This document shows positions 19,447 to 61,669 of a stretch of DNA of 64,000 bases, one piece after another. Below the pieces are notes generated by a model. That model did not search any database. It saw nothing but the letters and a program-made list of their open reading frames with translations, and was not told the origin of the DNA. Every line of letters starts with the position of its first letter. Positions within the stretch are counted from its first letter, which is position 1. The translations under genes and the position numbers were made by a program. The stretch covers positions 419,263 to 483,262 of IMG/VR virus record IMGVR_UViG_3300027996_002186; one strand, written 5' to 3'.

Positions 19447-20082
19447 TCATAGTATGTTTACTTTAACATTTCTATCTGATAATAGATCTTGTAACTCTTC
19501 TCTTCTGAATATTTTCTTATAAACATCAGTTTCCGCATCAGCATTTTGTAATATCCATTCATTACCATTTGATGTTTCATAGATATAGTTCTCATCACCA
19601 TCGATTATTTCAATAACCTTTGATGTTAGTTTGTCATAAAATTTCTTAACATCATCATTTATCTTATAAAGTTTAACATCTTCCCATTTCTTTATAGTTT
19701 CATTCCAAACTTGAAATAATAAATAGATTGGGTTTTCCAACTCATTTGTATTTATATCAAAAATAAACATAAACTTACATGGTTTGTTCAAAAATGTTTG
19801 AAAATCCTCTGAGTTCTTTAATTCTGACTTTTTAAGAGCTATACTTGATAATGAATTGATAAACTCAACATTATCACTTAAAGTATCTAAATCTAATTTA
19901 TCAGCGAAATCATCATTAGGCAATTTGAATGTGTCATAGATATCTACCTCTTCCGCGGATATTGAGTTTAGTAGAGCATCGTGCCATAAACTTAAAGATT
20001 CAAGTAGTTCTTCTACATTTTGGAATGTTAAATCAACAACTACCGATTCTTTGTGTTGTTTATATTTCTTTAAGTATTTCAT
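19447..20082 (-). CDS. Hypothetical protein with N-terminal capsid-targeting-like motif (start revised from 20094)
   Basis: Second Met gives MKYLKKYKQHKES. Confidence 0.65.
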   Translation of the reverse strand: MKYLKKYKQHKESVVVDLTFQNVEELLESLSLWHDALLNSISAEEVDIYDTFKLPNDDFADKLDLDTLSDNVEFINSLSSIALKKSELKNSEDFQTFLNKPCKFMFIFDINTNELENPIYLLFQVWNETIKKWEDVKLYKINDDVKKFYDKLTSKVIEIIDGDENYIYETSNGNEWILQNADAETDVYKKIFRREELQDLLSDRNVKVNIL

Positions 20083-36803: not shown

Positions 36804-38483
36804 ATGAAGTGGATAAAGGACCGAAATAAATTCTTAAAAGAAGCTAAACTTCGAGACGTTTTGTACCCTAGTCAATCAAAGGAAGTCGCTAGTTCTTGGA
36901 GTGAGAGATATCTTGATTATGAAGAAGTAGCTGCAACTGATAAAATAAAACAAGGTAAGTGGAAATTAGAAGAAGAAGATAAGTTAAAAGTACTTGGAGA
37001 GTTCTTCGATTGTAATATGAGTAATATATTTGAGTTATTTGAAAATTTACCAGATAAATTTAATGAGATTATTTCACAATCAATTGATTTTGATTTAATC
37101 AATAATCGAGATAAAGAAAAGTATAGTGTTATATTTAAGGAATTTGATATTAAAAAGCCTACGATAGACCAAATTGTTTTACTATTTGACAATGTTTTCA
37201 GAAAACTTTCTGTAAATGAAACAAACTCTTCTGAGATGATTCAGAAGGATGAGAATGGTAGACCAATGAGAGATGATAGTGGTAATATGATTAAAATACA
37301 GAAAGAACCGGGATCTCCTATATTCTCAACTAACTTAGTTAATATTAATTCATTTATATCTGATTATAATAGATGTTTTAGAAGTGATGAAGTACAAACA
37401 GATACATTTAATCAAAATGATATTCAAAATTTGAAAAGTTATGCTTCAGATCATTGTAATGATTACCAGGCTGATTTTGAGATATTTAATAGAGATATGT
37501 ACCTTTCTATATCACATAACCCAAAAGACATATTAAATATGTCAATATCTAAGTTTTATTCATCTTGTCAACATTTATACAATGGTGGATATAGAAGCCA
37601 GTTATTAGCTAATGTATTTGATCCTAATAGTATGCCAGCTTATTTAATATTTGATACTCCTTTATTTTGGAATGATAAAAAGATATCTGAATTTTTACCA
37701 TTGACAAGAATGATAATTAGAAATATCGAAACTTATGATGAGAGTGATGGTAAAGAGCCTCAAATATATTTTGATAGAGCTTATCCAGATAGGATGAAAG
37801 ATATCTTTGATGAAATTATAACAAAATATAGTGAGAATAAAAAAAGTGAGAATAATCCTAGGGACTATTACTATACACCAGATATTGATATCGAGACTGA
37901 TAAAGATATAAAAGAACCTTATATGGATAGAATTCGATTAAAACAGAGGCCTTATATAGGTATTAACACCAAAACACTTCACTTAAACAGAAATTATGAT
38001 TGGAGTAAAGTTAAAATAGCTCCAAATGCTAAGATTAAAGAATTGATAATTGAGACTGATGATATTCCAGAAAATATGTTAGATATTGATATTAAATTGG
38101 AGTGGGTAAAGTTCAAATATTTGAAAATTAATACATTGAAAAATTTCTCACATATTAAAACAAATGCTATTGCCTTTGATAAATGTAAATTTGATAACAA
38201 GGTATTAGAAGATATAAGTAAGATAAACAAAAATATAGATAAATTACAAATTGTTAGTTGTGATGCTAATAATTTGAATATTTCTGTTTTCGAAAATCTC
38301 GAAGAGTTACATATGATTTATACATTAGACTCATTAGAAGAATTAAAATCAACATTATCAAATTTAAAAAACATTAAAAAACTTGTTATATCAGGTGATT
38401 TATTAAGTGATAAAGAATCTAAAGCATTTGTTAATTCATTGAAATCTAGAATGAGAGTTGAAATAGTAGGACCAGTAATATGA
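36804..38483 (+). CDS. Protein with targeting-like N-terminus, SC(M/Q)-type domain and LRR-like C-terminus
   Basis: MKWIKDRNKFLKEA; SSCQ...RMII...FDRAYP...PYMD; IKELII/LEELHM/IKKLVI repeats. Confidence 0.65.
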   Translation: MKWIKDRNKFLKEAKLRDVLYPSQSKEVASSWSERYLDYEEVAATDKIKQGKWKLEEEDKLKVLGEFFDCNMSNIFELFENLPDKFNEIISQSIDFDLINNRDKEKYSVIFKEFDIKKPTIDQIVLLFDNVFRKLSVNETNSSEMIQKDENGRPMRDDSGNMIKIQKEPGSPIFSTNLVNINSFISDYNRCFRSDEVQTDTFNQNDIQNLKSYASDHCNDYQADFEIFNRDMYLSISHNPKDILNMSISKFYSSCQHLYNGGYRSQLLANVFDPNSMPAYLIFDTPLFWNDKKISEFLPLTRMIIRNIETYDESDGKEPQIYFDRAYPDRMKDIFDEIITKYSENKKSENNPRDYYYTPDIDIETDKDIKEPYMDRIRLKQRPYIGINTKTLHLNRNYDWSKVKIAPNAKIKELIIETDDIPENMLDIDIKLEWVKFKYLKINTLKNFSHIKTNAIAFDKCKFDNKVLEDISKINKNIDKLQIVSCDANNLNISVFENLEELHMIYTLDSLEELKSTLSNLKNIKKLVISGDLLSDKESKAFVNSLKSRMRVEIVGPVI

Positions 38484-40147
38484 GATATTTAAAACACATA
38501 AAAATATTTGAAGCTTTTAAATCTGATAAGTTATCTAAAACACTTGGATATATCGATTCGAAAAGAGACAAAGATGTCTTTTTAGATAAAATAAAAAGAA
38601 TATGTAATATAATTGATTTCCCTTATTCTGAATTATCAGATGAGTATTTTGAATATTTACCATTCAACTCAGCGCTCAAAAAGGCTGATACGATAAAAGA
38701 TGAACCTTGTGTAGCTACAAGTTCTGAAGAGTTCCCAGAATATGCTATTGCTGGAGAAGTTTGTAAGGAAGGTAAAATTAGAAGAAGATGGGGTAGTCGA
38801 ATTAGAGCTGTCTCTTGTCCTGTGTGTAATGGTACTGGTGTTAAGCCTAAACGAGGCGAGCCTAAGTTAGTTAAATTTTGGTTTAATAAAGATGGTAAAT
38901 ATATAGAAACTACTTGTGTGGATGGTATCATTAGAAATTATGGTGGTAGTTCTTCGGGGTCTGATATTCCATTACCACAAACATCATCTTCATATACGGT
39001 ATCTGGTGAAAAAATTTATCGATCAGGAGGAGCCCGAACTTTACAAACCGGACAATATATACATATAAAGATAAATGGTGAAGAGATGTATGCTTATATT
39101 CTTTCAGAAAGAAGAGATGTATATGCTATACAACCAAAGATGAATGGTGGTATTCCTAATAATACAAGTTCTAGGGTATGGAAAAAAATATCAAGTTATT
39201 CTTGGGATATTGGTGATGGTGATTTTGAATGGTTAATACCAGTTAGTCTTAATAATATGGATAATGATGATGCAGAACCAGAAGCTGATCCATATACTTG
39301 GAACACAGGACTCACTTTTAATTATAGGGGTATAAATTCGAATGGTAGGAATATTGAGCGTTTTATTAAAGATTCTCACTTTGCTATTGTTATGGATTTT
39401 GGGAAATTGAAAAAGTCTGAATTTCAAACTAGAACACACACCAAACATGGAAGAGAGGATAATAAAGTTGGAGCTTTATCTTTTATGAGTGATGATGAAA
39501 TTAAAAAAGAAAATATAGAAAGATATATTAAAAAATTAGCTTCTAGATTAGAAGTTGATGGTAAAGATGTAACTAACCTACCAAAGGTTATAAAAAGATT
39601 ATTAGGATATAGAAATTTAGTATATTTTTTAAGACAAGGACATACAGATCGTTATATATCTACAATTCTAAAAGGTTATATACTTTTATTAAAGAGTCCT
39701 GATGATCGTAAAGAAAGATATTTGAAAGAATTGAATGATAATATTAAATATTCTTTTAAGCAAAGCGTCGATAATAATAAGGATTTAACTAACATTCTAA
39801 AAGAGGTTAAGGATAGGTTAAAAAGAGAGGATAAGGAAGAATATATTGAAGTATTAGATCTTTTAAGTGAATTAAGTTTAGTCATTTATGATAAAATAAA
39901 TAGTTTTGAGCTTGAAACAATTGAAGATTTAGAAATTTTATATCAAAAGATAATGAGTATGAAGAATATTGTTAGATCTGATAGATATTCACTATCTAAA
40001 TTATCATATCATATGGATTACTCATTCAGACGTAGTTCTGATTATTCATATAGATACTTAACTGATAGATATTATATAGAACCTTCGAAGATGCCTAACT
40101 TAATAGAAGATATAAAAACAGCAATGCGAATAATTAAAAAAATGTAA
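38480..40147 (+). CDS. Protein with targeting-like N-terminus and DnaJ-type Zn-finger motif
   Basis: MRYLKHIKIFEA; CKEG...CPVCNGTG. Confidence 0.65.
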   Translation: MRYLKHIKIFEAFKSDKLSKTLGYIDSKRDKDVFLDKIKRICNIIDFPYSELSDEYFEYLPFNSALKKADTIKDEPCVATSSEEFPEYAIAGEVCKEGKIRRRWGSRIRAVSCPVCNGTGVKPKRGEPKLVKFWFNKDGKYIETTCVDGIIRNYGGSSSGSDIPLPQTSSSYTVSGEKIYRSGGARTLQTGQYIHIKINGEEMYAYILSERRDVYAIQPKMNGGIPNNTSSRVWKKISSYSWDIGDGDFEWLIPVSLNNMDNDDAEPEADPYTWNTGLTFNYRGINSNGRNIERFIKDSHFAIVMDFGKLKKSEFQTRTHTKHGREDNKVGALSFMSDDEIKKENIERYIKKLASRLEVDGKDVTNLPKVIKRLLGYRNLVYFLRQGHTDRYISTILKGYILLLKSPDDRKERYLKELNDNIKYSFKQSVDNNKDLTNILKEVKDRLKREDKEEYIEVLDLLSELSLVIYDKINSFELETIEDLEILYQKIMSMKNIVRSDRYSLSKLSYHMDYSFRRSSDYSYRYLTDRYYIEPSKMPNLIEDIKTAMRIIKKM

Positions 40148-43776: not shown

Positions 43777-44055
43777 ATGGAATCGGATTATATAATAGAT
43801 TTTAAAAGACTTAATGAATTAACTTCACATGAAAATGACAACCCATCATCAAATCAGGGAGGGTTTGGTGCGATGTACATCCACACAACTACTAGAAAAC
43901 TTATCAAAGAATATATGGAAATATACCAAGGTAGGTATAGCAGAAGTAGTGATGGGAAGAAAGTAGATGAGGTTATAGAAACTCTACACTTTAATCGAAT
44001 ACTTATATCAAAATCTGATATAAGAGATGGTAAAATAAAAGAAATATTAGAATGA
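43777..44055 (+). CDS. Hypothetical protein with C-terminal tag
   Basis: Ends IRDGKIKEILE. Confidence 0.7.
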   Translation: MESDYIIDFKRLNELTSHENDNPSSNQGGFGAMYIHTTTRKLIKEYMEIYQGRYSRSSDGKKVDEVIETLHFNRILISKSDIRDGKIKEILE

Positions 44056-44262
44056 ACAAAGACAAAGAAATTTAATTTATGGTAATGAGGAATTATAAAA
44101 AAATGTTATCAAACTTAGTAGCAAATATTGTTGCTTATGATAATTGGTCAGATGAATTTTCACGAAAGGAAATAAACAAACTTTATAAATTATTAATTGC
44201 AATCCGAACAGGAACTCCTGTTAAGAGAATCTAAATTAGAAGGTGTTTTAGATGAGAATTAA
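44052..44262 (+). pseudogene. Disrupted tagged ORF (in-frame TAA plus frameshift)
   Basis: MNKDKEI*FMVMRNY...KLL in one frame; LQSEQELLLRESKLEGVLDEN* in the +1 frame; overlaps both neighbours like an operon gene. Confidence 0.6.
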
Positions 44263-44473
44263 ACTAAAAGATATGCATGATAATATAACTTATAACGAAC
44301 AACACCAAGTAATTTATAAAGGTATTAATTTAGGAATAACAAGAGAAAATATAACAGACTATCAATTTCAAACCGGATTCGACCCAGTTGAAATGGTAGA
44401 AAATTTATACAAACAATCTTTACCAGTGGTTAGAGATAAAAAACTAAATCAAATATTAGATGAAGAAAATTAA
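44252..44473 (+). CDS. Hypothetical protein with C-terminal tag
   Basis: Ends VRDKKLNQILDEEN. Confidence 0.7.
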   Translation: MRIKLKDMHDNITYNEQHQVIYKGINLGITRENITDYQFQTGFDPVEMVENLYKQSLPVVRDKKLNQILDEEN

Positions 44474-45061: not shown

Positions 45062-45272
45062 TGGTATTAGATTACACAAAATAGGAGCCGAGAAGACTAG
45101 AGTATTTGAGGTTAACTTTGATGAAGTTTATGACCATTATAAACAAAAAGCAGAAGATGCTGGTTATTTTGGAGATCTTAAATTCATTAAAGAGAGGGGC
45201 AAAATAATAGTTTATTCTGTGATAGAGTTACCACCTGATGATGATGAATTAATCATCCGAGTTTCCTCTTAA
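45054..45272 (+). CDS. Hypothetical protein
   Basis: Coupled ORF. Confidence 0.55.
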   Translation: MSDGIRLHKIGAEKTRVFEVNFDEVYDHYKQKAEDAGYFGDLKFIKERGKIIVYSVIELPPDDDELIIRVSS

Positions 45273-45731
45273 ACGCTTAGTCATTTCCTCATAAGAGATT
45301 GGTATTCTCCAATAAAGTGATACATGAGAACATTCTTTATTTGAGTACCTTTCTAAATCATCTATTTTTATGAATTGACTATCATCATCTTTACGTTTAC
45401 CACCACCCACATGAACTTTAATAGCAAATATTGGTTGTATTATATATGAATATGTCTTTAAGAATTCATTTGATCTGTATATAACATCGAAAACATCACC
45501 AAATCTAAATGTTGGTACGGAAAAATCTTGTACGTGATCCTCATTAAAAATACCGTGTATTTCAACTCTTAAGCTATCACCAATAACTTCACCCCTTCTT
45601 TCAGAAGTTACAGTAGCCTCTAGATTTTGATCACGAGCATCGCATAATATATCATTAAGGTCATCAATTATAATTGACTCTTCCTCTTTGGTTATATCCT
45701 CAAATATTTTATATTTAATCAGGTACTTCAT
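45249..45731 (-). CDS. Paralogous-domain family protein
   Basis: MKYLIKYKIFED; DLNDILCDARDQNL...VIYRSNEFLK. Confidence 0.7.
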   Translation of the reverse strand: MKYLIKYKIFEDITKEEESIIIDDLNDILCDARDQNLEATVTSERRGEVIGDSLRVEIHGIFNEDHVQDFSVPTFRFGDVFDVIYRSNEFLKTYSYIIQPIFAIKVHVGGGKRKDDDSQFIKIDDLERYSNKECSHVSLYWRIPISYEEMTKRLRGNSDD

Positions 45732-46797
45732 TTATAAATTTCATACTTATTTCTTTTACGACTGGTCTAACATCAGTCTCTAAATCTGATTCCGATATAG
45801 ATATTTCAAAATCATCAAACTGCATTTCAGATTTAAATTTATATTCACCATCTTTCTTACCAACATATGAAAATTCTTCTTTCCACTCATTCATACCATT
45901 ATCAAGTACTTGAAATTCTATTGGGATTGATCCATTTGGATCAAAAGATGGGTTTCTTGCTTCTTCTCTCGATTTGTGTGAAGTGTTATTGTTTATTCCG
46001 TTAGGAAAATGTTTATCTAAAAAATCTAATAAACCCTTTATATTGAAATCATCTAAGCTTTTTAATTTCTCTGGATGAGGTGGGTAACTAAATGTCCCTC
46101 TTTTGTTATGTTGGCTAAACCTAATTGTAATGTTTTCAACATCATATTTAATTATATCCTTTATTTGGTTGATTCTATAATCGACATCATCTAATAGAAT
46201 AGTATTTTGTCCTCTTTTATAAAGAAGTACACCTATACCATATTTTGTAAATCCATTGGATGGCATACTTCTTTCCCTACTTGGGGTGACCATATAACCA
46301 TATCCCAAATCTTCCATATCATACAACATACTCTCAACATCACCACCGACATCATTATTATCTATATTTGTAATAGACTCATTTAGACTACAATCAGTTA
46401 CGTTTATATCAATATACCAAACTTCTGTCCCAATATAATCCAAAATATCTGAACTACTTAATTGGTACCATTCATTACCACTTAGATGTATCTCATATGT
46501 GCAAAAATTACAACCCTTTGACTTAACATATTGTGAAACTCTATATAAAGAATCAGATAGTTCTTTTGTTATTTCAAATTTCCCAGACATACTACCATCC
46601 TTGGTTGGTGTTATCTGAAAAAATATTCTATCAACCCCACGATTCGATCGTGTAATTTTCTTATTTATGAAAAGACCTAAATCCTCCACTTCTAATAAAA
46701 TATCTTTGATATCATCAAATAAATCCAAGAGGATTGCTTGAGGAAATTGAGGATATTTTGATTTCTCAAATAATTTATATGTTTCTAAATATTTCAT
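45715..46797 (-). CDS. Paralogous-domain family protein, two domain copies
   Basis: MKYLETYKLFE; DIKDILLEVEDLGL; SLNES linker; DVESMLYDMEDLGY. Confidence 0.7.
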   Translation of the reverse strand: MKYLETYKLFEKSKYPQFPQAILLDLFDDIKDILLEVEDLGLFINKKITRSNRGVDRIFFQITPTKDGSMSGKFEITKELSDSLYRVSQYVKSKGCNFCTYEIHLSGNEWYQLSSSDILDYIGTEVWYIDINVTDCSLNESITNIDNNDVGGDVESMLYDMEDLGYGYMVTPSRERSMPSNGFTKYGIGVLLYKRGQNTILLDDVDYRINQIKDIIKYDVENITIRFSQHNKRGTFSYPPHPEKLKSLDDFNIKGLLDFLDKHFPNGINNNTSHKSREEARNPSFDPNGSIPIEFQVLDNGMNEWKEEFSYVGKKDGEYKFKSEMQFDDFEISISESDLETDVRPVVKEISMKFINEVPD

Positions 46798-47774
46798 ATC
46801 TTAAATCTTAATCTAATATTGAAGCTGTGATAATGGCAATTCATTAACTCATCTATTGATTTCATATCTGCCCATTTATTTTGAAAGGATGCCGTTGCGA
46901 CCGAGATGAATAACTCATAACCAAGAGTTGTCATATAAGCATCTAGTCTTCTAACTACTTCACCGAACCATTCTGGTAAATCAAGTGATCCACTTCTATC
47001 AACCTCATCCCTCATATTAATTGTATCTATATTAATATAGAATGGTATGAAATAACCCTCTTTAATCTCATAATCAACATCATTATCAATAAACTCAATA
47101 CAAATATCATCAAGATCTCTTCTTAACTCAGATTTCTCGGTGTTCCGGAAGTTTTGATTTAAGTGGGTGTCCGAAAACAAATGTTGCTTCCGTTCGGTAA
47201 ATCTTACCAGACCAAACTGAGGTGATTCTACTTTACTCTCTGTGTAATATCCCGATGAAATTCTAATCGGAGGCCTTGTTTTTTTTGTTTTTATATCTAT
47301 TTGTGATATCTTAAAATAACCACTATCGAATTCAGAAATATTCTCTAGTTTTTCTAGATTTATATCTAAATCACACACACCCATTTCTGTATAATCAACG
47401 TTAAAAGCGGAGTTTTGATAAAATGCTCCAAACCTTAAATCACTATCTAAATATTCATCAAGTCTCATAATAATATCTATCAATTCTTCTGTTATTTTTA
47501 TATCACCAGAGTCACTCCCAGCACCAGAAGAAATATCATACTTATCATATATCTCAATCATCATATCATTATAAATACCTGATTTAGAATGCATTGAAGT
47601 TTGTTGATTGTAATCAACAAACAAATGACCTGTTAAAGATTCACCATCCATTGTTGATGATATTATACGATATTGTAGCCCTAAATCAATAAGATCCAAA
47701 CAGATATCATTGATATTATCCATTTCATCTGCACTTATCCCAACACTTTCATTAAAACTTTTTAAGTATTTCAT
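46794..47774 (-). CDS. Paralogous-domain family protein, two domain copies
   Basis: MKYLKSFNES; NINDICLDLIDLGL; YTES linker; DLDDICIEFIDND...RRLDAYMTTLG. Confidence 0.7.
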   Translation of the reverse strand: MKYLKSFNESVGISADEMDNINDICLDLIDLGLQYRIISSTMDGESLTGHLFVDYNQQTSMHSKSGIYNDMMIEIYDKYDISSGAGSDSGDIKITEELIDIIMRLDEYLDSDLRFGAFYQNSAFNVDYTEMGVCDLDINLEKLENISEFDSGYFKISQIDIKTKKTRPPIRISSGYYTESKVESPQFGLVRFTERKQHLFSDTHLNQNFRNTEKSELRRDLDDICIEFIDNDVDYEIKEGYFIPFYINIDTINMRDEVDRSGSLDLPEWFGEVVRRLDAYMTTLGYELFISVATASFQNKWADMKSIDELMNCHYHSFNIRLRFKI

Positions 47775-47811
47775 ATATAAATCTATATATTAATATGGTA
47801 AACCCATTACA

Positions 47812-48456
47812 ATGGTAAAAAGATATCTTGATGAAATTAATCTAAATAAAACACAAGGCCACATAACTTGTTATGTTAATAACCCCAGATACAACCTATT
47901 AAAGATACATAGTGATGTAGTCCGTATAGACTTCACACACTTATATAATCGTGTTTTGATACAGATGGATGATGAAGGACTTATACCTGATGAGAAGGTA
48001 AATATAGAATCAATAAAATATTTATTAAGTATTAAGGAAGATGTAGAAGAATCTGATATGTCTAATTGGAGATACGTTTTCAACTCGATATGGAGTAGGG
48101 TTTTTCGAAGAAATCAAAATGGTGCTAATATTGTGTGTGATTACTTACACCATTTTTACAAAGAACTTTTATACAAAAATAATAATGAAATTATTTATAT
48201 AGACACTGATAGTATTATTTTAAATGGGTTAAGCCAAGATGTTAAAAAACTAATAGATGAGTTAGAACTACCATATAAAATTGTTGATGTAGATTATTTT
48301 TATTTAATTGCTAAAAAGCGTTACGCTTATACAGATGAGAATCATAATATTAAAATAAAAGGATTACTTAAAAAGGAATTAAACCGTTTTGAAAAACTAG
48401 AATCTATGATGAGAACACATATAAGAGAAGATAAACTTATAAGTATTGGGTTATAA
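47812..48456 (+). CDS. Minimal family-B DNA polymerase palm-like protein with C-terminal tag
   Basis: IDFTHLYN (motif A), RYVFNSIWS (motif B-like), YIDTDSI (motif C), KKRYAY...IKGL; ends IREDKLISIGL. Confidence 0.75.
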   Translation: MVKRYLDEINLNKTQGHITCYVNNPRYNLLKIHSDVVRIDFTHLYNRVLIQMDDEGLIPDEKVNIESIKYLLSIKEDVEESDMSNWRYVFNSIWSRVFRRNQNGANIVCDYLHHFYKELLYKNNNEIIYIDTDSIILNGLSQDVKKLIDELELPYKIVDVDYFYLIAKKRYAYTDENHNIKIKGLLKKELNRFEKLESMMRTHIREDKLISIGL

Positions 48457-48570
48457 TGTGGTGGGGAAAAAGAAGAGAGAAAGGAAGACGAAAATCATAG
48501 GATATACCAGAGGTTCTAGACAGACCCGAACATAGAGATAGAAGAGTTAGAAAATTAAAAAAATATTCAA

Positions 48571-50601
48571 ATGAAAATGTATAAATACCCAGAATTTAAA
48601 TACCCAAACTTAGAAACATATATATCAGAACTTGAGAGTATATTAAATAAGTCAGAATTAGTAATAAATGAATTGTTAAAAATTGATAATAAAACATATG
48701 ATACTTTCCTAAAGCCATATTTCATGGCTTATGAAGATATAAACAATCATTACTTTTATCTATCACACATAAATTCAGTTAAGAATACTGATGATACACA
48801 ACGTGTTGAAACTGAGAGCTTACCAATTATGAGTGATTGGTACACAAAGATAGGTCAACGAGATGACATTCATCAAGCATTATTGGAGGTTTCGAAAACA
48901 AATCTTAACCCAAGTCAGCGCATAGTAATCGAACAATCATTGCTTAGTAACAAACTAAAGGGTATTGGTCAAGAAGATTCAATTAAGAAAAGGCTTGGTG
49001 AAATTAGCAAAGAGTTATCTGAGTTATCTGATTCATTTTCTACAAACCTACTAAAAGCTACAAAGGATTTCAAACTAGAAGTAAAAAATCCAGAAGATGT
49101 TAGTGAGTTCCCTGATGATGAATTACAAAGACATGTAAAAGAGGATACTGATCATTGGGAATTTACCTTACAAGCACCATCATACTCAGCTTACTTAAAG
49201 TATGGATCTAACACAGATATAAGAGAGAAATTATCCAAAGCATTATCAACAAGAGCTACTGAAAATGAAGAACTTATTGAAAAAATATTAACTCTTAAAA
49301 ACGAAAAGGCTAAAATATTAGGATATAAAAATTACGCTGAGATATCGATATTAACAAAAATGGCTGATAGTCCAAATGAAATAGTTGGGTTTTTGGATAG
49401 GTTAGCAACAATCGCCTTACCTATTAAGTCAAAAGAAGATGATGAATTATTATCATTCACTGAAAGAAAGTATGGCGTAACACATTTAAACTCTTGGGAT
49501 AAAGGTTATTACACAAATAAATATAAGGAAAGTGTTTATGATTTTAAGTCAGAAGATTTGAAACCATATTTTGAACAATCAATGGTGTTAAATGGTTTAT
49601 TTGACTTTCTGTATGAAAAATTCAAGCTTAAATTTACTAAAGTAGATACTTATGTTTGGGATGAAAAGGTTACTGTGTATGATATAACACGTAATGGTGA
49701 AGAACATTCAAGAGTTTATATCGATCTAGAATCTAGAGATGATAAAAGATCCGGTGCTTGGATGAATAATTCAGAAGTTGGTTATGTAAAGGAAAATGGT
49801 GAAAAGGTTTTACCAATTGCTTATATAACTTGCAATTTCACACCATCAACTGATAAGTTACCATCATTACTTTCACACTATGAAGTAGAAACACTATTTC
49901 ATGAGATGGGACATGTATTACAACACGTCTGTTCAGAAGTGGAAGATTTCACATACGCTGGTATAGGTGGTATCGAGTGGGATGCTGTTGAGTGGAGTTC
50001 TCAATTTTTAGAACTATTTGTTTATGAAGGAGATGTATTAAGGAAATTTGGTAAACACCATGAAACTGGTGAAATAATACCGGATGAGTTCATTAAAAAG
50101 ATTAACGATTTAAGAACATACAGAGCAGCTAATGGAATCATAGGACAAGTGAAGAATGGTAAATTCGATATGACAATTTTCCAATCAGATGATACGTCAA
50201 AGGAATATGTACAATCAACACTTGATAAGATAATAGAAGATTTTGGATTGGAATCTTTTGATGGTAATAAATGGCAATGTGGGTTTAGTCATATTTTTGC
50301 TGGTGGATACTCAGCAGGGTATTACTCTTATAAATGGTCAGAAGTTCTTTCAGTTGATACTTTCTTAAAATTTAGAGAAAATGATGATAGTGATAAGTAT
50401 TATGAAGAATTTTTGAGTAAGGGCTCATCTCTGCCAAGTATGGATATGTTTGTTAATTATATGGGTAGAAAGCCTAGTGAAGAATCATTAGTAAACTACC
50501 TAATCGGATTACAACCTGTTTCGTCAGGTCGAGAGTTTGAATCCCTTCAAGCGAAGTTTGATTCAAAAAGAATTAATAATGAACTTAGAGGGTTGGGGTA
50601 A
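48571..50601 (+). CDS. prlC: M3A metallopeptidase, oligopeptidase A (OpdA/PrlC)-like
   Basis: KRSGAWM, TLFHEMGH, WDAVE.SSQFLE, FSHIFAGGYSAGYYSYKWSEV. Confidence 0.93.
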   Translation: MKMYKYPEFKYPNLETYISELESILNKSELVINELLKIDNKTYDTFLKPYFMAYEDINNHYFYLSHINSVKNTDDTQRVETESLPIMSDWYTKIGQRDDIHQALLEVSKTNLNPSQRIVIEQSLLSNKLKGIGQEDSIKKRLGEISKELSELSDSFSTNLLKATKDFKLEVKNPEDVSEFPDDELQRHVKEDTDHWEFTLQAPSYSAYLKYGSNTDIREKLSKALSTRATENEELIEKILTLKNEKAKILGYKNYAEISILTKMADSPNEIVGFLDRLATIALPIKSKEDDELLSFTERKYGVTHLNSWDKGYYTNKYKESVYDFKSEDLKPYFEQSMVLNGLFDFLYEKFKLKFTKVDTYVWDEKVTVYDITRNGEEHSRVYIDLESRDDKRSGAWMNNSEVGYVKENGEKVLPIAYITCNFTPSTDKLPSLLSHYEVETLFHEMGHVLQHVCSEVEDFTYAGIGGIEWDAVEWSSQFLELFVYEGDVLRKFGKHHETGEIIPDEFIKKINDLRTYRAANGIIGQVKNGKFDMTIFQSDDTSKEYVQSTLDKIIEDFGLESFDGNKWQCGFSHIFAGGYSAGYYSYKWSEVLSVDTFLKFRENDDSDKYYEEFLSKGSSLPSMDMFVNYMGRKPSEESLVNYLIGLQPVSSGREFESLQAKFDSKRINNELRGLG

Positions 50602-50643
50602 TAATCTTTTAAGCGTTTTGTAAAAAATAAATAAATAATAGAT

Positions 50644-51396
50644 ATGATAACAGATAAATACGTATTTTTTTGGGGTGGAATCTGCAGCCAATGGGCCGCA
50701 TCTGAATTTGAAATTGATGGACAAAAATATACTTGTGCAGAACAGTATATGATGTATAAGAAAGCTTCTTTATTTGAAGATGAAGATGTAGAAAATGCTA
50801 TAATGAGAACCAATAACCCCAGAGAGCAAAAAGCTTTAGGAAGAAAAGTTAGAGGTTTTGACAAAGATAAGTGGGAAGAAGTTTGTAAAGAATATGTTTA
50901 TGAAGCTAACTATGCTAAGTTCACACAAAACTCATTCATGCTTGAAGAGTTAAAAACTTATGGTGATAGAGAAATTGTAGAAGCATCACCAGAAGACTCT
51001 ATTTGGGGGATTGGAATGCATGAGACTGACCCTGATATCCTTGACAAGACCAAGTGGAGGGGAACAAACTGGCTTGGAGAAGCAATAATGCGAGTTAGAG
51101 ATGAATTATTAACTGAAAATGTAAAGACTTTAAATTTAATATACAGACATACAGGCGATGGTAAGTTCGTTGCTGAAATGGAAGACGGTTCTTTTAAGGA
51201 CTTGGGCCCTAATGCTGTCGGGATGATTAGGTATACTTATTTTGAAGAAGATACACTACCATCAAATGGATGGGAAGTTACAAGAGGTAAGCTATTAGAA
51301 GATTACCAACCAAAGATGTTAAAAGATTATCAGGATGGTAAGTTTGAAGTTTCTCACATAGATGAACATGGGATGAAACACTTTAAAGAAAAATGA
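50644..51396 (+). CDS. NADAR (YbiA-like) protein with C-terminal extension
   Basis: SQW, AEQYMM..KA..F.D, KALGRKV, KFTQN, VEASP.D.IWGIG, W.G.N.LG...M.VR. Confidence 0.9.
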   Translation: MITDKYVFFWGGICSQWAASEFEIDGQKYTCAEQYMMYKKASLFEDEDVENAIMRTNNPREQKALGRKVRGFDKDKWEEVCKEYVYEANYAKFTQNSFMLEELKTYGDREIVEASPEDSIWGIGMHETDPDILDKTKWRGTNWLGEAIMRVRDELLTENVKTLNLIYRHTGDGKFVAEMEDGSFKDLGPNAVGMIRYTYFEEDTLPSNGWEVTRGKLLEDYQPKMLKDYQDGKFEVSHIDEHGMKHFKEK

Positions 51397-51450
51397 CAAG
51401 TAAAGAGGAAAATAATTATTAGATATATAATTAAAATATAAATAATTATT

Positions 51451-52107
51451 ATGATTAAGAATAAATTAGGATATGAAATGGATGGGTTATTAAATAACCT
51501 AGATAATTATGATATAACAGAAGAAGAAATCCTTGAGATGAAGGAAAAGATGAAAGAGATGGATAGAAAGTTGAAGGAAAAGAATAAACCTAAGACTATA
51601 ACCATAAGTGCCCAAACACACTCATCTATAAAAAAGTATTGTAATTCAATGGACTTAAACATTGGTGATTGGGTAACTAAAGTTCTTATTAATGAGATTA
51701 ATGAAGAAAGATGTACTGAGGAATTTGAACAAGAAGACTATGTTAAGACTGAAACAAAGGAAATACTTGAAAGATACGAAGCTTCTAAGAAATATAAAAG
51801 CTTATACAAAACTGATAAGTTAATATTTCATAAGAAGTTTGCGTTCAAAGGATATTCATCACTTGATGGTAAACCAGTATATGAATGTGATTTCAAAAAT
51901 GTATTAACTTTATTATATGAGTATGATGTTGACTGTGTTGTTGCAAACAAACGTGAGATAGGTAATGGGATATATCATAACCTTGATTTAGAAGTAGAAT
52001 TATTAATACCAGAAAAACAAACTGAGGGACTTACTTTTGAAGAAATGAAGGCTCGAATTAAAGAAACCGATGAAATTTATGGGAAGAAGGGCTGGGTAAC
52101 GCCATAG
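51451..52107 (+). CDS. Hypothetical protein with ribbon-helix-helix-like segment
   Basis: KTITISAQTHSSIKKYC....I..WV..LI. Confidence 0.55.
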   Translation: MIKNKLGYEMDGLLNNLDNYDITEEEILEMKEKMKEMDRKLKEKNKPKTITISAQTHSSIKKYCNSMDLNIGDWVTKVLINEINEERCTEEFEQEDYVKTETKEILERYEASKKYKSLYKTDKLIFHKKFAFKGYSSLDGKPVYECDFKNVLTLLYEYDVDCVVANKREIGNGIYHNLDLEVELLIPEKQTEGLTFEEMKARIKETDEIYGKKGWVTP

Positions 52108-56439: not shown

Positions 56440-56889
56440 TTAATCCTTTATACCCAATTCTTTTAATTTTGATTCTCTAATCAATCTCTTTGTTTCTGGA
56501 TAATTATCATATATATAATCCACCATTGTGTGTATTTCGTTAATAACATAATCTTTATCTCTATAAGTACCAGTCATTTCAAATGGAGACCGCGTGGATA
56601 AATATTCATCTAGTATATAATAAGGAGAAAAGTCATTAGAATGAGCAGTATCAAATCCTATTTTCAATTCATTATCAACCACCTCACAATAAGTAACACT
56701 ACCATGACAAGGTATAGACTCTGCTTCATCATTATCGAAAAGTGGATGCCAGTTTGGTATGAAAATATATCCACACCAATTTTTCATCTGATTCCTTATC
56801 ATCTCACATTTGATATGTAAATATTCAAATTTGAGATTATCTCCTTCTTTATCTAAAATATCTAATATTTCCTCTTTATTCATATTCAC
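56440..56889 (-). CDS. Conserved phage-type protein (WCGY/HG/GFD.AH) with C-terminal tag
   Basis: WCGYIFIP..HP, CHGSVTY, IGFDTAH..D; ends IRESKLKELGIKD. Confidence 0.7.
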   Translation of the reverse strand: MNMNKEEILDILDKEGDNLKFEYLHIKCEMIRNQMKNWCGYIFIPNWHPLFDNDEAESIPCHGSVTYCEVVDNELKIGFDTAHSNDFSPYYILDEYLSTRSPFEMTGTYRDKDYVINEIHTMVDYIYDNYPETKRLIRESKLKELGIKD

Positions 56890-58330: not shown

Positions 58331-60034
58331 CTAAAAAGGAAGATCATCTCCATCACCATATCCAAAGTTAACATCTGATTGATCATCATCTAAATTAAAA
58401 ACCGGCTCAGAAGGCGGCGGTGTAGGATCAACCTCACGAGGTATATTATCAAAGTATCTCCTTGGTACTCTACTAGACTCTATTATAAGTTCACGAACCC
58501 TATCCAAGTCCCCTGCCGTTAACCTATCGATATGAAGGATAGACTGAACCTCTGATACATTACTTTCCCTTCTTATACGTCCGATTGATTGCTCAACACA
58601 CTCACCTTCATCCATCTGATCTATTGGCATCTCAACTTCATCCTCAACTTCATCAGGGTCGAAGTCTTCATTATACTCCGGATCAGGGTCGAAGTCTTCA
58701 TTATACTCCGGATATAAAAAATCCGCATCAATCCCACCATATCCAACTTCCCTATTATCCCTTATCTTTAAGTATGTACCATTCGTACACCTAAACTCCC
58801 TTGTATGACCCAACTCTTTATCATTCGTAATAATTAAACAACCATCCTCATTTATACAAAAACACATCGTATCCATATAAGGAAAGTAATCCATATCAAC
58901 CGTGTCTAATTCAACCTCAAACCTATCATCAATCTCATTTCCATCTAAAGTAACACAAGCCTCTGGATACATCGTTTGCTCTACCTTACGATACCAACCC
59001 TTATTCTTAGCATAAGTCTTGAATAACTCTATATCACTATCAACATTACAGTAGATTCTATCTAAAAACTTTACCATACGCCCATTATACTTTACATCCC
59101 ATAATAACGCCCTACCCTTGATTCTATCAGATTCATATGAACCTTGTTTCAAAATTCCATCATCACTATATAAAATTACCATCGAACAACAACTGTTCTT
59201 AGAATAGATGTTAAAAAATTCCTTTGGCTTATTAGCCATACAAGAATTACTTAACTGACCTCCACCACCTACATAATTATCTCCATTATACCAAAAAGCA
59301 ATTTTATCACCAGTAACTATATTAAACTGTATATCCTTATTAGTAGAAAAATCATATGAAGACTTATATAAATTTACAAAGTCCTCGATATCCTTAGTAA
59401 TAAACTTTATACCCGCCGTAGTAAGTATAAGCCTAACTAACCTACCCACCTTTATCGAATTCCTATTCACCGTGAAAATAACATCACTATTGTCAGAAAT
59501 AATAATAGCCTTTTTATTTACTACCGATAACCTACCAGTATCTAAACACTTGAATAAAACATAAACCTTATCAGTAGAAGGACTTACAACCTCATTTATA
59601 ATTTTACCCTTATCTCCAATACCACAACCACACGATAACCCACCATCCATAAGAACACTATCTATACAATCACACGATGGCTCCGGATACCAATAATCGT
59701 TAACACTCTTATCATATCCTATTAAACCGAAAATAGTATTATTAGAATTACTATGAGTTAAATTCCTAATCGAACTAACACCATATACCTTAGGTAAATC
59801 ACTAAGTATCTTTTCTACCTTATCAGATGGAGTAAAAGTAACTAACCTATTCGTATCACCTATACTTATAAAGTTATAATCAAAACTATCAAACGCCATT
59901 CCAACTGCTGCAAGCCCAGGATGTCTGTGGTCAGGTTCTCCAGATAACCTTTCTATAAGCAAAAGATTTTTAGATACCTTATTATACGATACCCTTTGTA
60001 GTAACTCCCGAAACTTCTTTGAAAATTTTAACAT
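58331..60034 (-). CDS. SCM-motif phage protein with acidic tail (start revised from 60088)
   Basis: GQLSNSCMA, IKGRALLW, FLDRIY, FPYMDT; ends DDLPF. Confidence 0.65.
   Translation of the reverse strand: MLKFSKKFRELLQRVSYNKVSKNLLLIERLSGEPDHRHPGLAAVGMAFDSFDYNFISIGDTNRLVTFTPSDKVEKILSDLPKVYGVSSIRNLTHSNSNNTIFGLIGYDKSVNDYWYPEPSCDCIDSVLMDGGLSCGCGIGDKGKIINEVVSPSTDKVYVLFKCLDTGRLSVVNKKAIIISDNSDVIFTVNRNSIKVGRLVRLILTTAGIKFITKDIEDFVNLYKSSYDFSTNKDIQFNIVTGDKIAFWYNGDNYVGGGGQLSNSCMANKPKEFFNIYSKNSCCSMVILYSDDGILKQGSYESDRIKGRALLWDVKYNGRMVKFLDRIYCNVDSDIELFKTYAKNKGWYRKVEQTMYPEACVTLDGNEIDDRFEVELDTVDMDYFPYMDTMCFCINEDGCLIITNDKELGHTREFRCTNGTYLKIRDNREVGYGGIDADFLYPEYNEDFDPDPEYNEDFDPDEVEDEVEMPIDQMDEGECVEQSIGRIRRESNVSEVQSILHIDRLTAGDLDRVRELIIESSRVPRRYFDNIPREVDPTPPPSEPVFNLDDDQSDVNFGYGDGDDLPF
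58652..58713 (-). repeat. Perfect 30-bp tandem duplication within the CDS
   Basis: ATCAGGGTCGAAGTCTTCATTATACTCCGG x2 (PEYNEDFDPD). Confidence 0.95.
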
Positions 60035-60852: not shown

Positions 60853-61287
60853 TTGAAAGATATGAAGAATGAATTAACAGTGCGTACTGAGGTTATAAGT
60901 GTTGAATTTACTTGTAGTAATTACAATAGAATGGCTACTATCTTGGCGCCAAAATTTTCTAATCATGTACTGAGTGTAAAGGCTACTTGGTCAAACATTT
61001 CTTTTGACGCCAACAGTAAGTTTACCAGACGGAGAAAGTCCTATGCAAATTCTGTTAGTACTGATATTTTACTAGCACCTCCTGGAGGTTCTCGTTTCAA
61101 ATATAACGCCAAGTGTTTTTTAACGGGTGAATACAAATTAGATTTGAGGTGGTATGAATATTTTGGTTTAAATTCAGATGTTGATATTGAAATACAGAAG
61201 GAGGGTACTATGGAGTTACCGGTTGAGATATATTATACTTCTGTTATCTTGGATAGGCAGGATAAATTGGAGACGTTAGGAGTGTAG
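60853..61287 (+). CDS. Hypothetical protein with C-terminal tag
   Basis: Ends DRQDKLETLGV. Confidence 0.65.
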   Translation: MKDMKNELTVRTEVISVEFTCSNYNRMATILAPKFSNHVLSVKATWSNISFDANSKFTRRRKSYANSVSTDILLAPPGGSRFKYNAKCFLTGEYKLDLRWYEYFGLNSDVDIEIQKEGTMELPVEIYYTSVILDRQDKLETLGV

Positions 61288-61557: not shown

Positions 61558-61596
61558 TTAGTATTTGGTTTACTTTGATGTAAGTTATGTGTTTTG

Positions 61597-61669
61597 TTGT
61601 CCCACTAGGGCTCGAACCTAGACTCTTCTGTACCAAAAACAGACGTGTTGCCAGTTACACCATGGGACA
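61597..61669 (-). tRNA. tRNA-Gln (anticodon UUG), 3' CCA not encoded
   Basis: TGTCCCA/TGGGACA acceptor stem, TCTGT-TTTTGGT-ACAGA anticodon arm, CTAGG-TTCGAGC-CCTAG T arm; followed by CAA rather than CCA. Confidence 0.93.

What the first reader, a model, noticed from the sequence alone, without database searches (positions are those of the whole stretch)
47812..48456. A 214-aa family-B polymerase core with all catalytic motifs but no exonuclease or thumb
Seen in correct order: IDFTHLYN (cf. DFxSLYPS), RYVFNSIWS (cf. KxxxNSxYG, with K>R and YG>WS), YIDTDS (cf. YGDTDS), KKRY and IKG, then the C-terminal tag. Both catalytic Asp positions are kept and the fingers are very short. Known PolB enzymes are several times longer. 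Inference: either a stand-alone minimal nucleotidyl transferase with changed substrate selection, a subunit recruited through its tag, or a decoy for defence sensors that detect phage polymerases.
Basis: partly seen in the sequence, partly recalled or inferred. Interest (0 to 1): 0.75.

Follow-up and report, generated by a model that had tools for sequence, protein, structure and literature searches.

The report
Stand-alone mini PolB core in huge phage
A giant marine phage carries, besides its normal (split) replicative DNA polymerase, a conserved 214-residue protein that is just the catalytic palm and short fingers of a family-B DNA polymerase. It belongs to an apparently undescribed phage family whose job is unknown, though it is probably an accessory nucleotide-adding enzyme.

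Summary
Window 47812-48456 (+) is an intact 214-aa ORF with PolB motifs A, B, C, KKRY and KG in canonical order. A profile of 64 homologues matches archaeal PolB sequences (E=1e-9). A high-confidence AlphaFold model (pLDDT 92) matches only PolB palm and fingers (Pol alpha, RB69, phi29; Z 9-11). It has no N-terminal, exonuclease or thumb domain beyond the first thumb helix.

It is not a decaying fragment. At least 78 sequence clusters of about 190-290 aa exist, all metagenomic or viral where known, and dN/dS is 0.35. Motif C Asp residues are about 98% conserved and the steric-gate Tyr is invariant. The motif-A carboxylate shifts two residues upstream when lost.

It is not the replicase. The window's contig is a fragment; a 483-kb assembly with an identical copy, and two 635-642-kb relatives, also encode a split T4-like PolB with all motifs.

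The "C-terminal tag" is real but generic: 26 of 390 ORFs on the contig end with it.

Best reading, about 50% confidence: an accessory, exonuclease-free, low-processivity nucleotidyl transferase that probably needs a partner. An inert adaptor or decoy is the main rival. I judge it a new variant of a known kind, moderately interesting.

The parts
47812..48456 (+). Mini-PolB gene of 214 aa: PolB palm, short fingers and first thumb helix. It has no N-terminal, exonuclease or thumb domain.
   Evidence: ORF and translation. Family profile against PDB PolBs, E=1.1e-9. AF2 model pLDDT 91.9. Fold matches are PolB only.
47926..47949 (+). Motif A (IDFTHLYN). It holds D40, the metal ligand, and Y45, the steric-gate Tyr.
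   Evidence: Aligned to PolB motif A. Y45 is present in 66/66 family members. Position 40 is D or E in 38/66, and a Glu sits at position 38 in 10 of the other 28.
48070..48096 (+). Motif B (RYVFNSIWS) on the second finger helix, with R87 and N91.
   Evidence: K or R at position 87 in 52/66 and N91 in 59/66. The helix spans residues 80-100 in the model.
48196..48213 (+). Motif C (YIDTDS) beta-hairpin, with D131 and D133.
   Evidence: D131 in 65/66, D133 in 64/66 and Y129 in 61/66. Aligned to YGDTDS of Pol alpha and archaeal PolB.
48313..48363 (+). KKRY hairpin (residues 168-171) followed by IKG (182-184) at the palm/thumb junction.
   Evidence: K169 in 61/66, Y171 in 55/66 and G184 in 60/66. 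Aligned to the KKRY...G of archaeal PolB.
48424..48453 (+). C-terminal tag REDKLISIGL, consensus R-x-x-K-[LI]-x-x-[LI]-[LG]-x, at the end of the C-terminal helix.
   Evidence: R205 in 65/66, K208 in 50/66, L or I at 209 in 65/66. The same motif ends 26 of 390 ORFs on the contig against 0.3 expected. Codon usage shows peptide-level constraint.
47775..47811 (.). 37-nt divergent intergenic region. It carries the genome's abundant upstream motif: an exact TTAATATATAG facing the minus-strand gene and a one-mismatch copy facing the mini-PolB.
   Evidence: AATATATA lies upstream of 84 of 390 ORFs against 6.1 expected. The upstream sequence was printed and read.
48457..48570 (+). Remnant of a small basic ORF that, in related strains, starts by overlapping the mini-PolB stop codon. 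Here it is broken by a 1-nt deletion and a deletion of about 47 nt.
   Evidence: Intact 52-57-aa versions exist in L018, L017, L019 and LR745206. The window and the identical 483-kb contig have only frame-shifted pieces. Another strain has extra bases at 48462 and 48556.
51451..52107 (+). 218-aa ORF of unknown function. Its homologue lies directly downstream of the mini-PolB in LR745206. Here it is separated by an M3 peptidase gene (48571-50601) and a NADAR gene (50644-51396).
   Evidence: blastp 45% identity, E=4e-54. Pfam hits for the inserted genes.

Best explanation
Shown:
- The ORF encodes a stand-alone family-B polymerase catalytic core. It has the palm, a minimal two-helix fingers hairpin and the first thumb helix.
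- It belongs to a conserved family of roughly 190-240-aa proteins (a few reach about 290 aa), found so far in a clade of AT-rich huge phages and in metagenomes.
- It is kept by selection.
- It coexists with a complete, T4-like, split replicative PolB, so it is an accessory gene and not the replicase.

Inferred:
- The protein is a working nucleotidyl transferase that adds dNTPs to a 3'-OH.
- The metal site would be D40 with D131 and D133. The triphosphate would be held by K69, R87 and N91. The invariant steric-gate Tyr45 would exclude ribonucleotides. The KKRY hairpin would hold the primer end.
- With no exonuclease it cannot proofread. With no thumb it should be distributive and bind DNA weakly on its own.
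- It therefore most likely does short-patch or end-directed synthesis such as gap filling, mismatch or lesion extension, or tailing. It probably does so while held on DNA by a partner.
- The conserved C-terminal helix and tag, shared with many other small proteins of this phage, is the obvious docking element. Its receptor is unknown.
For: - PolB homology by sequence profile and by fold.
- Breadth of the family: 78 representative clusters, 25 of them at E<=1e-10, nearly all 190-245 aa. Same-size copies occur in LR745206 (216 aa, 48% identity) and LR756502 (210 aa). The ESM Atlas holds a 219-aa all-viral cluster at TM 0.83.
- Selection: dN/dS=0.35, Fisher p=0.0014. Of 29 substitutions, only one falls at a key position, and it is conservative (S92T).
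- Active-site conservation: Y45 66/66, D131 65/66, D133 64/66, K169 61/66, N91 59/66, K/R87 52/66, K/R69 49/66.
- The motif-A carboxylate is relocated rather than simply lost. Glu at position 38 occurs in 10 of 28 sequences lacking D/E40 and in 0 of 38 that have it (Fisher p=6e-5).
- Accessory status: an identical copy lies in a 483-kb contig that also has a PolB N-half (512 aa, with ExoI and motif A) and a C-half (motifs B, C, KKKY, thumb and a T4-like clamp tail). The same holds in LR745206 and LR756502. Each genome has one mini-PolB.
- The family is only motif-level similar to the phage's own PolB.
- The tag is a peptide-level, clade-wide C-terminal signal.
Against: - No biochemical data exist.
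- 18 of 66 family members have no acidic residue at position 38 or 40. At least part of the family may be inactive or use a different chemistry.
- No thumb and no identified DNA-binding partner.
- No conserved operon partner. Neighbours differ between lineages. The PF10108 exonuclease is absent from LR756502. The coupled small basic ORF is broken in this very strain.
- Transcription is not demonstrated. Only 160-200-nt metatranscriptome contigs cover the 3' end, and DNA carry-over is possible.
- dN/dS of 0.35 is fairly relaxed for a core enzyme.
- The covariation count is not corrected for shared ancestry.
Confidence: 0.5

Rival explanations
1. Catalytically inert PolB derivative used as an adaptor, regulator or decoy. 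In this reading the fold and its nucleotide/DNA-end-binding surface are kept for binding, not catalysis. It might sequester dNTPs or 3' ends, dock onto replisome parts, or distract a host sensor. Recruitment would be through the C-terminal tag.
For: - The motif-A acidic position is not conserved: D or E in 38/66, and no nearby acid in 18/66.
- No thumb, exonuclease or N-terminal domain.
- The gene sits among small accessory genes rather than replication genes.
- Precedent for inactivated PolB folds in viruses: HSV UL8 is the second-best structural match (Z 10.5), other herpesvirus helicase-primase subunits match too, and poxvirus F12 is described as an inactivated polymerase (PMC4304020, listed).
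Against: - By my recollection, inert PolB derivatives such as UL8 have lost the catalytic motifs. Here DTD, the steric-gate Tyr, the motif-B Asn and KKRY are 89-100% conserved across very divergent members.
- The motif-A carboxylate is compensated at position 38.
- Archaeal PolB2 was likewise predicted inactive but proved to be an active extender polymerase (PMC8764526).
Confidence: 0.28
2. A template-independent enzyme. It could be a terminal transferase that tails DNA or RNA ends, or a palm-domain NTP-condensing enzyme that makes a small nucleotide product, rather than a templated polymerase.
For: - The absence of a thumb and the very short fingers leave little to hold a template-primer duplex.
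- The motif-B Tyr-Gly is Trp-Ser in this protein and variable across the family.
- The neighbourhood contains counter-defence-type genes, including NADAR. The genome also encodes an Acb1/LigT-like phosphoesterase fused to an exonuclease.
Against: - The KKRY primer-binding hairpin and the steric-gate Tyr are conserved, as in templated PolBs.
- I know of no PolB-fold enzyme that makes cyclic or oligonucleotide signals (own knowledge, not tested here).
- No sequence or fold match to cyclases ranked above polymerases.
Confidence: 0.12
3. An essential third piece of the phage's split replicative PolB, needed to complete the replicase.
For: - The replicative PolB in this clade is split into separately encoded halves.
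- Split phage PolBs with extra subunits are known, for example PhiKZ DNAP-N/C plus Rhc (PMC13648687).
- In the 483-kb contig the C-half has a frame break just upstream of motif B.
Against: - The two halves already carry ExoI, motif A (N-half) and motifs B, C, KKKY, thumb and clamp tail (C-half). The mini-PolB would duplicate parts rather than complement them.
- It is only motif-level similar to them.
- It evolves much faster than conserved neighbours elsewhere in the genome: 48% against 82-91% identity to LR745206.
Confidence: 0.05
4. A decaying fragment or pseudogene of a full-length polymerase.
For: Small size. Pfam PF00136 does not detect it.
Against: - Intact same-length homologues in at least 78 clusters and in five other phage contigs.
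- dN/dS 0.35.
- A confident compact fold.
- Clean domain boundaries at the canonical start of the palm and at the palm/thumb junction.
Confidence: 0.01

Closest known systems
Canonical family-B DNA polymerases (RB69/T4 gp43, archaeal PolB, Pol alpha, phi29, E. coli Pol II)
   Same: Same palm fold with motifs A, C and KKRY. Helical fingers carrying motif B are inserted between A and C. Same order and spacing logic. Best sequence-profile and fold matches.
   Different: It is 214 aa, against about 570-1500 aa. It has no N-terminal domain, no 3'-5' exonuclease and no thumb beyond its first helix. The fingers are about half the usual length. Motif B is NSxWS rather than NSxYG. Pfam PF00136 does not detect it. 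It has a clade-specific C-terminal tag.
Split PolBs: this phage clade's own T4-like N-half plus C-half, and PhiKZ DNAP-N/DNAP-C (PMC13648687)
   Same: PolB functions are distributed over separately encoded polypeptides in huge phages.
   Different: Those pieces are complementary fragments that together rebuild a full PolB. The mini-PolB contains all polymerase motifs contiguously and lacks the other domains altogether. It is an extra paralogue, not a fragment.
Inactivated PolB-fold proteins (herpesvirus UL8, poxvirus F12, Pol epsilon C-terminal half)
   Same: A PolB fold is reused as an accessory protein beside a real polymerase. UL8 is a top structural match. F12 is described in PMC4304020.
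   Different: By my recollection, those are full-size proteins that lost the catalytic motifs. This one lost the domains but kept the motifs.
Archaeal PolB2/Dpo2 extender polymerase (PMC8764526)
   Same: An exonuclease-deficient accessory PolB that coexists with replicative PolBs. It has degenerate motifs yet is active and specialised for extension.
   Different: By my recollection Dpo2 is a much longer protein that retains thumb and N-terminal regions. No specific sequence relationship to it was found here.
Minimal split Pol III alpha of group 2.2 jumbo phages (Iyer et al. 2021, PMC7824862)
   Same: A stripped-down polymerase catalytic core that accompanies a family-B replicase in jumbo phages.
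   Different: It belongs to an unrelated polymerase superfamily (family C, Pol-beta-like nucleotidyltransferase) and is itself split in two.
Other small viral PolB-like proteins in structure databases
   Same: Short viral proteins with a PolB palm: ESM Atlas clusters of about 254 and 281 aa, and BFVD entries of 253-291 aa, one named 'divergent family B DNA polymerase'.
   Different: They fall in different clusters (TM 0.66-0.68 against 0.83 for the own family). None is characterised. Their relationship to this family was not resolved.

Membership tests
Family B DNA polymerase (polymerase domain) | Motif A (DxxSLYPS) with catalytic Asp and steric-gate Tyr | tested here: met
   IDFTHLYN at residues 39-46, aligned to PolB motif A. 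Y45 is invariant. Across the family the Asp position is D or E in only 38/66.
Family B DNA polymerase (polymerase domain) | Motif B (KxxxNSxYG) on a fingers helix | tested here: inconclusive
   The protein has RyvfNSiWS. The basic residue and the Asn are kept (K/R 52/66, N 59/66). Tyr-Gly is replaced by Trp-Ser here, while the family consensus is NSxYG.
Family B DNA polymerase (polymerase domain) | Motif C (YGDTDS) with two Asp in a beta-hairpin | tested here: met
   YIDTDS. D131 in 65/66 and D133 in 64/66. A hairpin is predicted at residues 127-137.
Family B DNA polymerase (polymerase domain) | KKRY (KxY) primer-binding motif | tested here: met
   KKRY at residues 168-171. K169 in 61/66 and Y171 in 55/66. 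Aligned to archaeal PolB KKRY.
Family B DNA polymerase (polymerase domain) | Palm plus fingers fold | tested here: met
   AF2 pLDDT 91.9. PolBs are the only strong matches, with Z up to 11.3 and 190-200 residues aligned.
Family B DNA polymerase (full enzyme) | 3'-5' exonuclease domain (Exo I-III) | tested here: not met
   The protein starts at the palm. There is no exonuclease region in the sequence, model or matches.
Family B DNA polymerase (full enzyme) | Thumb domain | tested here: not met
   The chain ends after one helix (187-211). This helix aligns to the start of the thumb, up to RB69 residue 762 in a chain of about 900 residues.
Family B DNA polymerase (full enzyme) | Detected by Pfam PF00136 above the gathering score | tested here: not met
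   No Pfam hit at E<=1. No PF00136 match in a six-frame search of the contig.
Family B DNA polymerase (full enzyme) | Template-directed DNA synthesis | not testable with these tools
   Needs primer-extension assays.
Split replicative PolB of T4-like phages (gp43 A/B type) | The fragment is complementary to another fragment, and together they give one set of motifs | tested here: not met
   The N-half and C-half in the same genome already hold all motifs. The mini-PolB holds A, B and C itself and is only motif-level similar to them.
Inactivated PolB-like proteins (UL8/F12 type) | Loss of catalytic motif residues | tested here: not met
   Catalytic residues are present in this protein and are mostly conserved in the family.

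The most novel reading that the evidence does not exclude
The family could be the smallest naturally occurring PolB-lineage polymerase, a roughly 25-kDa palm-and-fingers enzyme. In one version it synthesises DNA without any thumb or exonuclease domain of its own. In the other it gains DNA grip in trans by docking, through a clade-wide C-terminal peptide tag, onto a hub that also recruits dozens of other small phage proteins. That would define both a minimal polymerase architecture and a new protein-recruitment code in huge phages.
Probability: 0.15. Interest if true: 0.85.

Novelty: new variant of a known kind. Interest (0 to 1): 0.6.

Why it matters
- Minimal architecture. If active, this would set a new lower size limit for a PolB-type polymerase. 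It would show which parts of the fold suffice for nucleotide addition. That matters for polymerase evolution and for engineering compact enzymes.
- Biology of huge phages. These phages, already equipped with a full T4-like replisome, keep a second, stripped-down, proofreading-free polymerase core under selection. This points to a specialised DNA transaction such as repair, end processing, mutagenesis or counter-defence that is not yet described for them.
- Abundance. Near-identical sequence occurs in at least 20 marine or seawater metagenome runs from many studies, so the phage is environmentally common.
- The tag. The shared C-terminal tag hints at an unrecognised recruitment or sorting system in this clade.

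Tried and rejected
1. The 567-aa ORF at window 58331-60034 (-) gave a weak tblastn hit (E=0.005) to a relative's PolB C-half. It has no polymerase motifs and no Pfam or PHROG polymerase match. I treat it as a chance hit.
2. "The genome has no other polymerase". I rejected this as an artefact of a truncated contig. The contig end is syntenic with LR745206 just short of its PolB N-half. G000 is collinear with a 483-kb contig that does have the split PolB. CheckV's 91% completeness is not credible here.
3. The stand-alone PF10108 PolB-type exonuclease (220 aa) as an obligatory partner. It is absent from LR756502, which has the mini-PolB.
4. The tag as a DNA-level signal such as a promoter or RBS. 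Codon usage in the tag mirrors the genome's, and Leu uses four codons. The motif is frame-specific and sits 0-6 residues from the stop.
5. The tag as a mark of DNA-metabolism proteins. Nine of ten other tagged proteins have no family match; one is MazG-like.
6. Wider genomic context.
   - The full 64-sequence alignment had no block usable for a viral scan.
   - Look-ups of five further family members gave only 1-4-kb contigs.
   - A 10-sequence alignment found two more contigs.
7. Complex prediction of the mini-PolB with the coupled small basic protein of the 86%-identical strain. The result was no verdict (score 0.02). It is not evidence either way.
8. Metatranscriptomes. Only short contigs lie on the 3' end of the gene. 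This is inconclusive for expression.
9. The protein-atlas feature search returned only unnamed viral clusters.
10. Literature searches found no description of this family. The library is incomplete, so absence is not proof.

Full report
**1. The observation**

Window 47812-48456 (+) is a single 214-codon ORF.
- IDFTHLYN, residues 39-46.
- RYVFNSIWS, residues 87-95.
- YIDTDS, residues 129-134.
- KKRY, residues 168-171.
- IKG, residues 182-184.
- A C-terminal REDKLISIGL.

Standard libraries barely see the protein. Pfam gives nothing. PHROGs gives one weak DNA-polymerase hit (E=1.6e-4). A single-sequence search of PDB chains gives only E of about 0.3 to the motif-C region of Pol alpha.

**2. It is a real PolB core**

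An exhaustive search of 1.8 billion representative proteins found 78 clusters at E<=1e-3, 25 of them at E<=1e-10. Nearly all are 190-245 aa and none exceeds 292 aa.

A profile built from 64 of them matches archaeal family-B polymerases in the PDB at E=1.1e-9. Motif A aligns to motif A, and residues 85-186 align to motifs B, C, KKRY and the KG at the palm/thumb junction.

With that alignment, AlphaFold2 gives a confident model (pLDDT 91.9, pTM 0.86). Its elements are:
- a motif-A strand (32-41) and helix (44-54);
- a two-helix fingers hairpin (59-75 and 80-100);
- a palm helix (102-123);
- the motif-C hairpin (127-137);
- the KKRY hairpin (155-174);
- one long C-terminal helix (187-211).

Foldseek's top 50 PDB hits are all PolBs. 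An independent all-against-all aligner gives:
- Pol alpha, Z 11.3;
- HSV polymerase, Z 10.4;
- RB69 gp43, Z 9.7 (model 12-213 against residues 388-762);
- phi29, Z 9.5;
- E. coli Pol II, Z 8.9;
- HSV UL8, Z 10.5. From my own knowledge, UL8 is an inactivated PolB homologue.

So the protein is the PolB palm, short fingers and the first thumb helix. No N-terminal domain, exonuclease or thumb is present.

**3. It is not a fragment in decay**

Same-length intact copies occur in two curated huge-phage genomes: LR745206 (216 aa, 48% identity) and LR756502 (210 aa, 25% identity). Copies also occur in three IMG/VR contigs.

Against an 86%-identical marine homologue, dN/dS is 0.35 (17.5 synonymous and 30.5 non-synonymous changes; Fisher p=0.0014). 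Only one of the 29 substitutions touches a key residue, and it is conservative.

Across 66 aligned members the conservation is as follows.
- Y45, equivalent to the steric-gate Tyr of PolBs: invariant.
- D131: 65/66. D133: 64/66.
- K169: 61/66. N91: 59/66.
- K/R87: 52/66. K/R69: 49/66.

The exception is the motif-A Asp position, which is D or E in only 38/66. That loss is partly compensated. A Glu two residues upstream, on the same face of the strand, occurs in 10 of the 28 sequences lacking D/E40 and in none of the 38 that have it (p=6e-5, not corrected for phylogeny). Eighteen members have no acid at either place. The window's own protein has the complete canonical set.

**4. It is not the replicase**

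The window's contig (G000, 312.7 kb) shows no PolA, PolC or canonical PolB. That absence is an artefact of truncation.
- The contig's end is syntenic, at 82-91% protein identity, with LR745206 just short of that genome's PolB N-half gene.
- A 483-kb IMG/VR contig carries a 100% identical mini-PolB and is collinear with G000.

That larger contig encodes a split T4-like PolB.
- A 512-aa N-half carries ExoI (FIDIETE) and motif A (YDFASLYP).
- A C-half of about 436 aa carries NGSYG, YGDTDS, KKKY, a thumb and a T4-like hydrophobic clamp-binding tail.

LR745206 and LR756502 have the same two halves. Each genome has exactly one mini-PolB. The mini-PolB family is only motif-level similar to these halves. 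It is therefore an old, separate paralogue and not a recent duplicate.

**5. Context and the tag**

- The gene lies in accessory territory. On one side are divergently transcribed members of a large family that shares an MKYLK-type N-terminus.
- On the other side are an M3 peptidase gene and a NADAR gene. Relative to LR745206, these two appear inserted between the mini-PolB and its conserved 187/218-aa neighbour.
- The C-terminal tag (R-x-x-K-[LI]-x-x-[LI]-[LG]-x) is nearly invariant in the family. It is not polymerase-specific. It ends 26 of 390 ORFs on the contig, against 0.3 expected.
- The tag is constrained as a peptide rather than as DNA.
- In LR756502 and in two other contigs the mini-PolB sits inside arrays of small genes, most of which carry the tag.
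- Other tagged proteins have no recognisable function, apart from one MazG-like pyrophosphatase.
- No gene is a constant neighbour. The PF10108 exonuclease is missing from LR756502.
- A small basic ORF that overlaps the mini-PolB stop codon in close relatives is broken in this strain and absent from distant members.

**6. Mechanism**

The pattern here is domains lost but nucleotide-binding and metal-binding residues kept, with relocation of the motif-A carboxylate. This is the opposite of what I recall for inert PolB derivatives such as UL8. It resembles the history of archaeal PolB2, which was predicted dead but proved to be an active, exonuclease-free extender (PMC8764526).

I therefore favour, at about 0.5, an accessory proofreading-free nucleotidyl transferase.
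- The invariant steric-gate Tyr suggests dNTPs as substrate.
- The KKRY hairpin suggests it acts on a 3'-OH.
- The missing thumb suggests it is distributive and probably depends on a partner reached through the C-terminal helix and tag.

All of this is inference. Expression evidence is weak, and the one complex prediction gave no verdict. The main rival, at about 0.28, is an inert adaptor or decoy. A template-independent transferase is at about 0.12. An essential replicase subunit (about 0.05) and a pseudogene (about 0.01) are largely excluded.

**7. Novelty**

I found no description of this family.
- The jumbo-phage survey of Iyer et al. reports a minimal split Pol III alpha, not a mini-PolB (PMC7824862).
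- Structure databases hold this family and two other small viral PolB-like clusters, either unnamed or only automatically named.

It fails membership as a full family-B polymerase because it lacks an exonuclease and a thumb and is below the Pfam threshold. It clearly belongs to the PolB palm lineage. I rate it a new variant of a known kind, with interest 0.6.

Noticed in passing
26 ORFs across G000. In the window: 43777-44055, 44252-44473, 47812-48456, 56440-56883 (-), 60862-61287. Also L006, L161 and L162.: A clade-wide C-terminal peptide tag, R-x-x-K-[LI]-x-x-[LI]-[LG]-x, usually followed by one residue and then the stop. It ends about 7% of the ORFs, against 0.3 expected by chance. It marks whole arrays of small genes in related phages. 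The constraint is at the peptide level, and its receptor and purpose are unknown.
   Followed up: partly
Window 45249-45731 (-), 45715-46797 (-), 46794-47774 (-), 19447-20082 (-), 38480-40147 (+) and others. About 40 ORFs in G000.: A second shared terminus. About 10% of ORFs, ranging from 71 to 575 aa, begin with MKYLK-x-[YF]-x-x-F-[NE]-E-like sequences. The same is seen in LR745206 and in other contigs. This may be an N-terminal sorting or assembly signal, or a very large paralogous family.
   Followed up: no
Window 48457-48570: The purine-rich spacer after the mini-PolB is the wreck of a small, very basic ORF of 52-57 aa. The ORF is intact and overlaps the mini-PolB stop codon in an 86%-identical strain and in LR745206. 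Here it is broken by a 1-nt deletion and a deletion of about 47 nt. Another strain has extra bases at 48462 and 48556.
   Followed up: yes
Whole contig G000 (the window is G000 8837-72836, reversed): The 312.7-kb record is rated 91% complete but is a fragment. It is collinear with a 483-kb contig rated 98% complete. It extends about 9 kb beyond that contig's end, so the genome is at least 492 kb. Relatives are 635-642 kb.
   Followed up: yes
L024 394-1932 and L025 1435-2745 (483-kb contig); L008-L012 (relatives): The replicative PolB of this clade is split between motif A and motif B into two genes roughly 100 kb apart. In the 483-kb contig the C-half also has a frame break or in-frame stop just upstream of motif B. 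This could be an indel, an intron or an assembly error.
   Followed up: partly
G000 146746-148056 (L001 892-2202): A 436-aa fusion of a 2H phosphoesterase (weak matches to LigT, 2'-5' RNA ligase and anti-CBASS Acb1) with a DEDD-type exonuclease. It is a candidate nuclease of cyclic-nucleotide signals or an RNA-repair enzyme.
   Followed up: no
Window 48571-50601 and 50644-51396: An M3-family oligopeptidase gene (E=1e-105) and a NADAR-domain gene (E=2e-49) lie where LR745206 has nothing between the mini-PolB and its neighbour. This looks like a recent insertion of accessory or counter-defence-type genes.
   Followed up: partly
Genome-wide; example at window 47775-47811: A strongly enriched upstream motif, TTAATATATA. 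AATATATA lies upstream of 84 of 390 ORFs against 6 expected. It is presumably a phage promoter, and its timing class is unknown.
   Followed up: partly
Window 56440-56883 (-): A 147-aa MazG-like nucleotide pyrophosphatase (phrog_2164, E=3e-23) that also carries the C-terminal tag.
   Followed up: no
Window 58331-60034 (-): A 567-aa ORF in the most GC-rich part of the window. It has Cys-rich stretches and an acidic C-terminal region with a duplicated PEYNEDFDPD. No family match was found.
   Followed up: partly
Window 61596-61669 (-): A single tRNA-Gln (anticodon TTG).
   Followed up: no
Window 46500-51500: Near-identical sequence occurs in at least 20 marine, seawater or brine metagenome runs from many studies (2012-2021). 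This is a common and widespread marine phage.
   Followed up: partly
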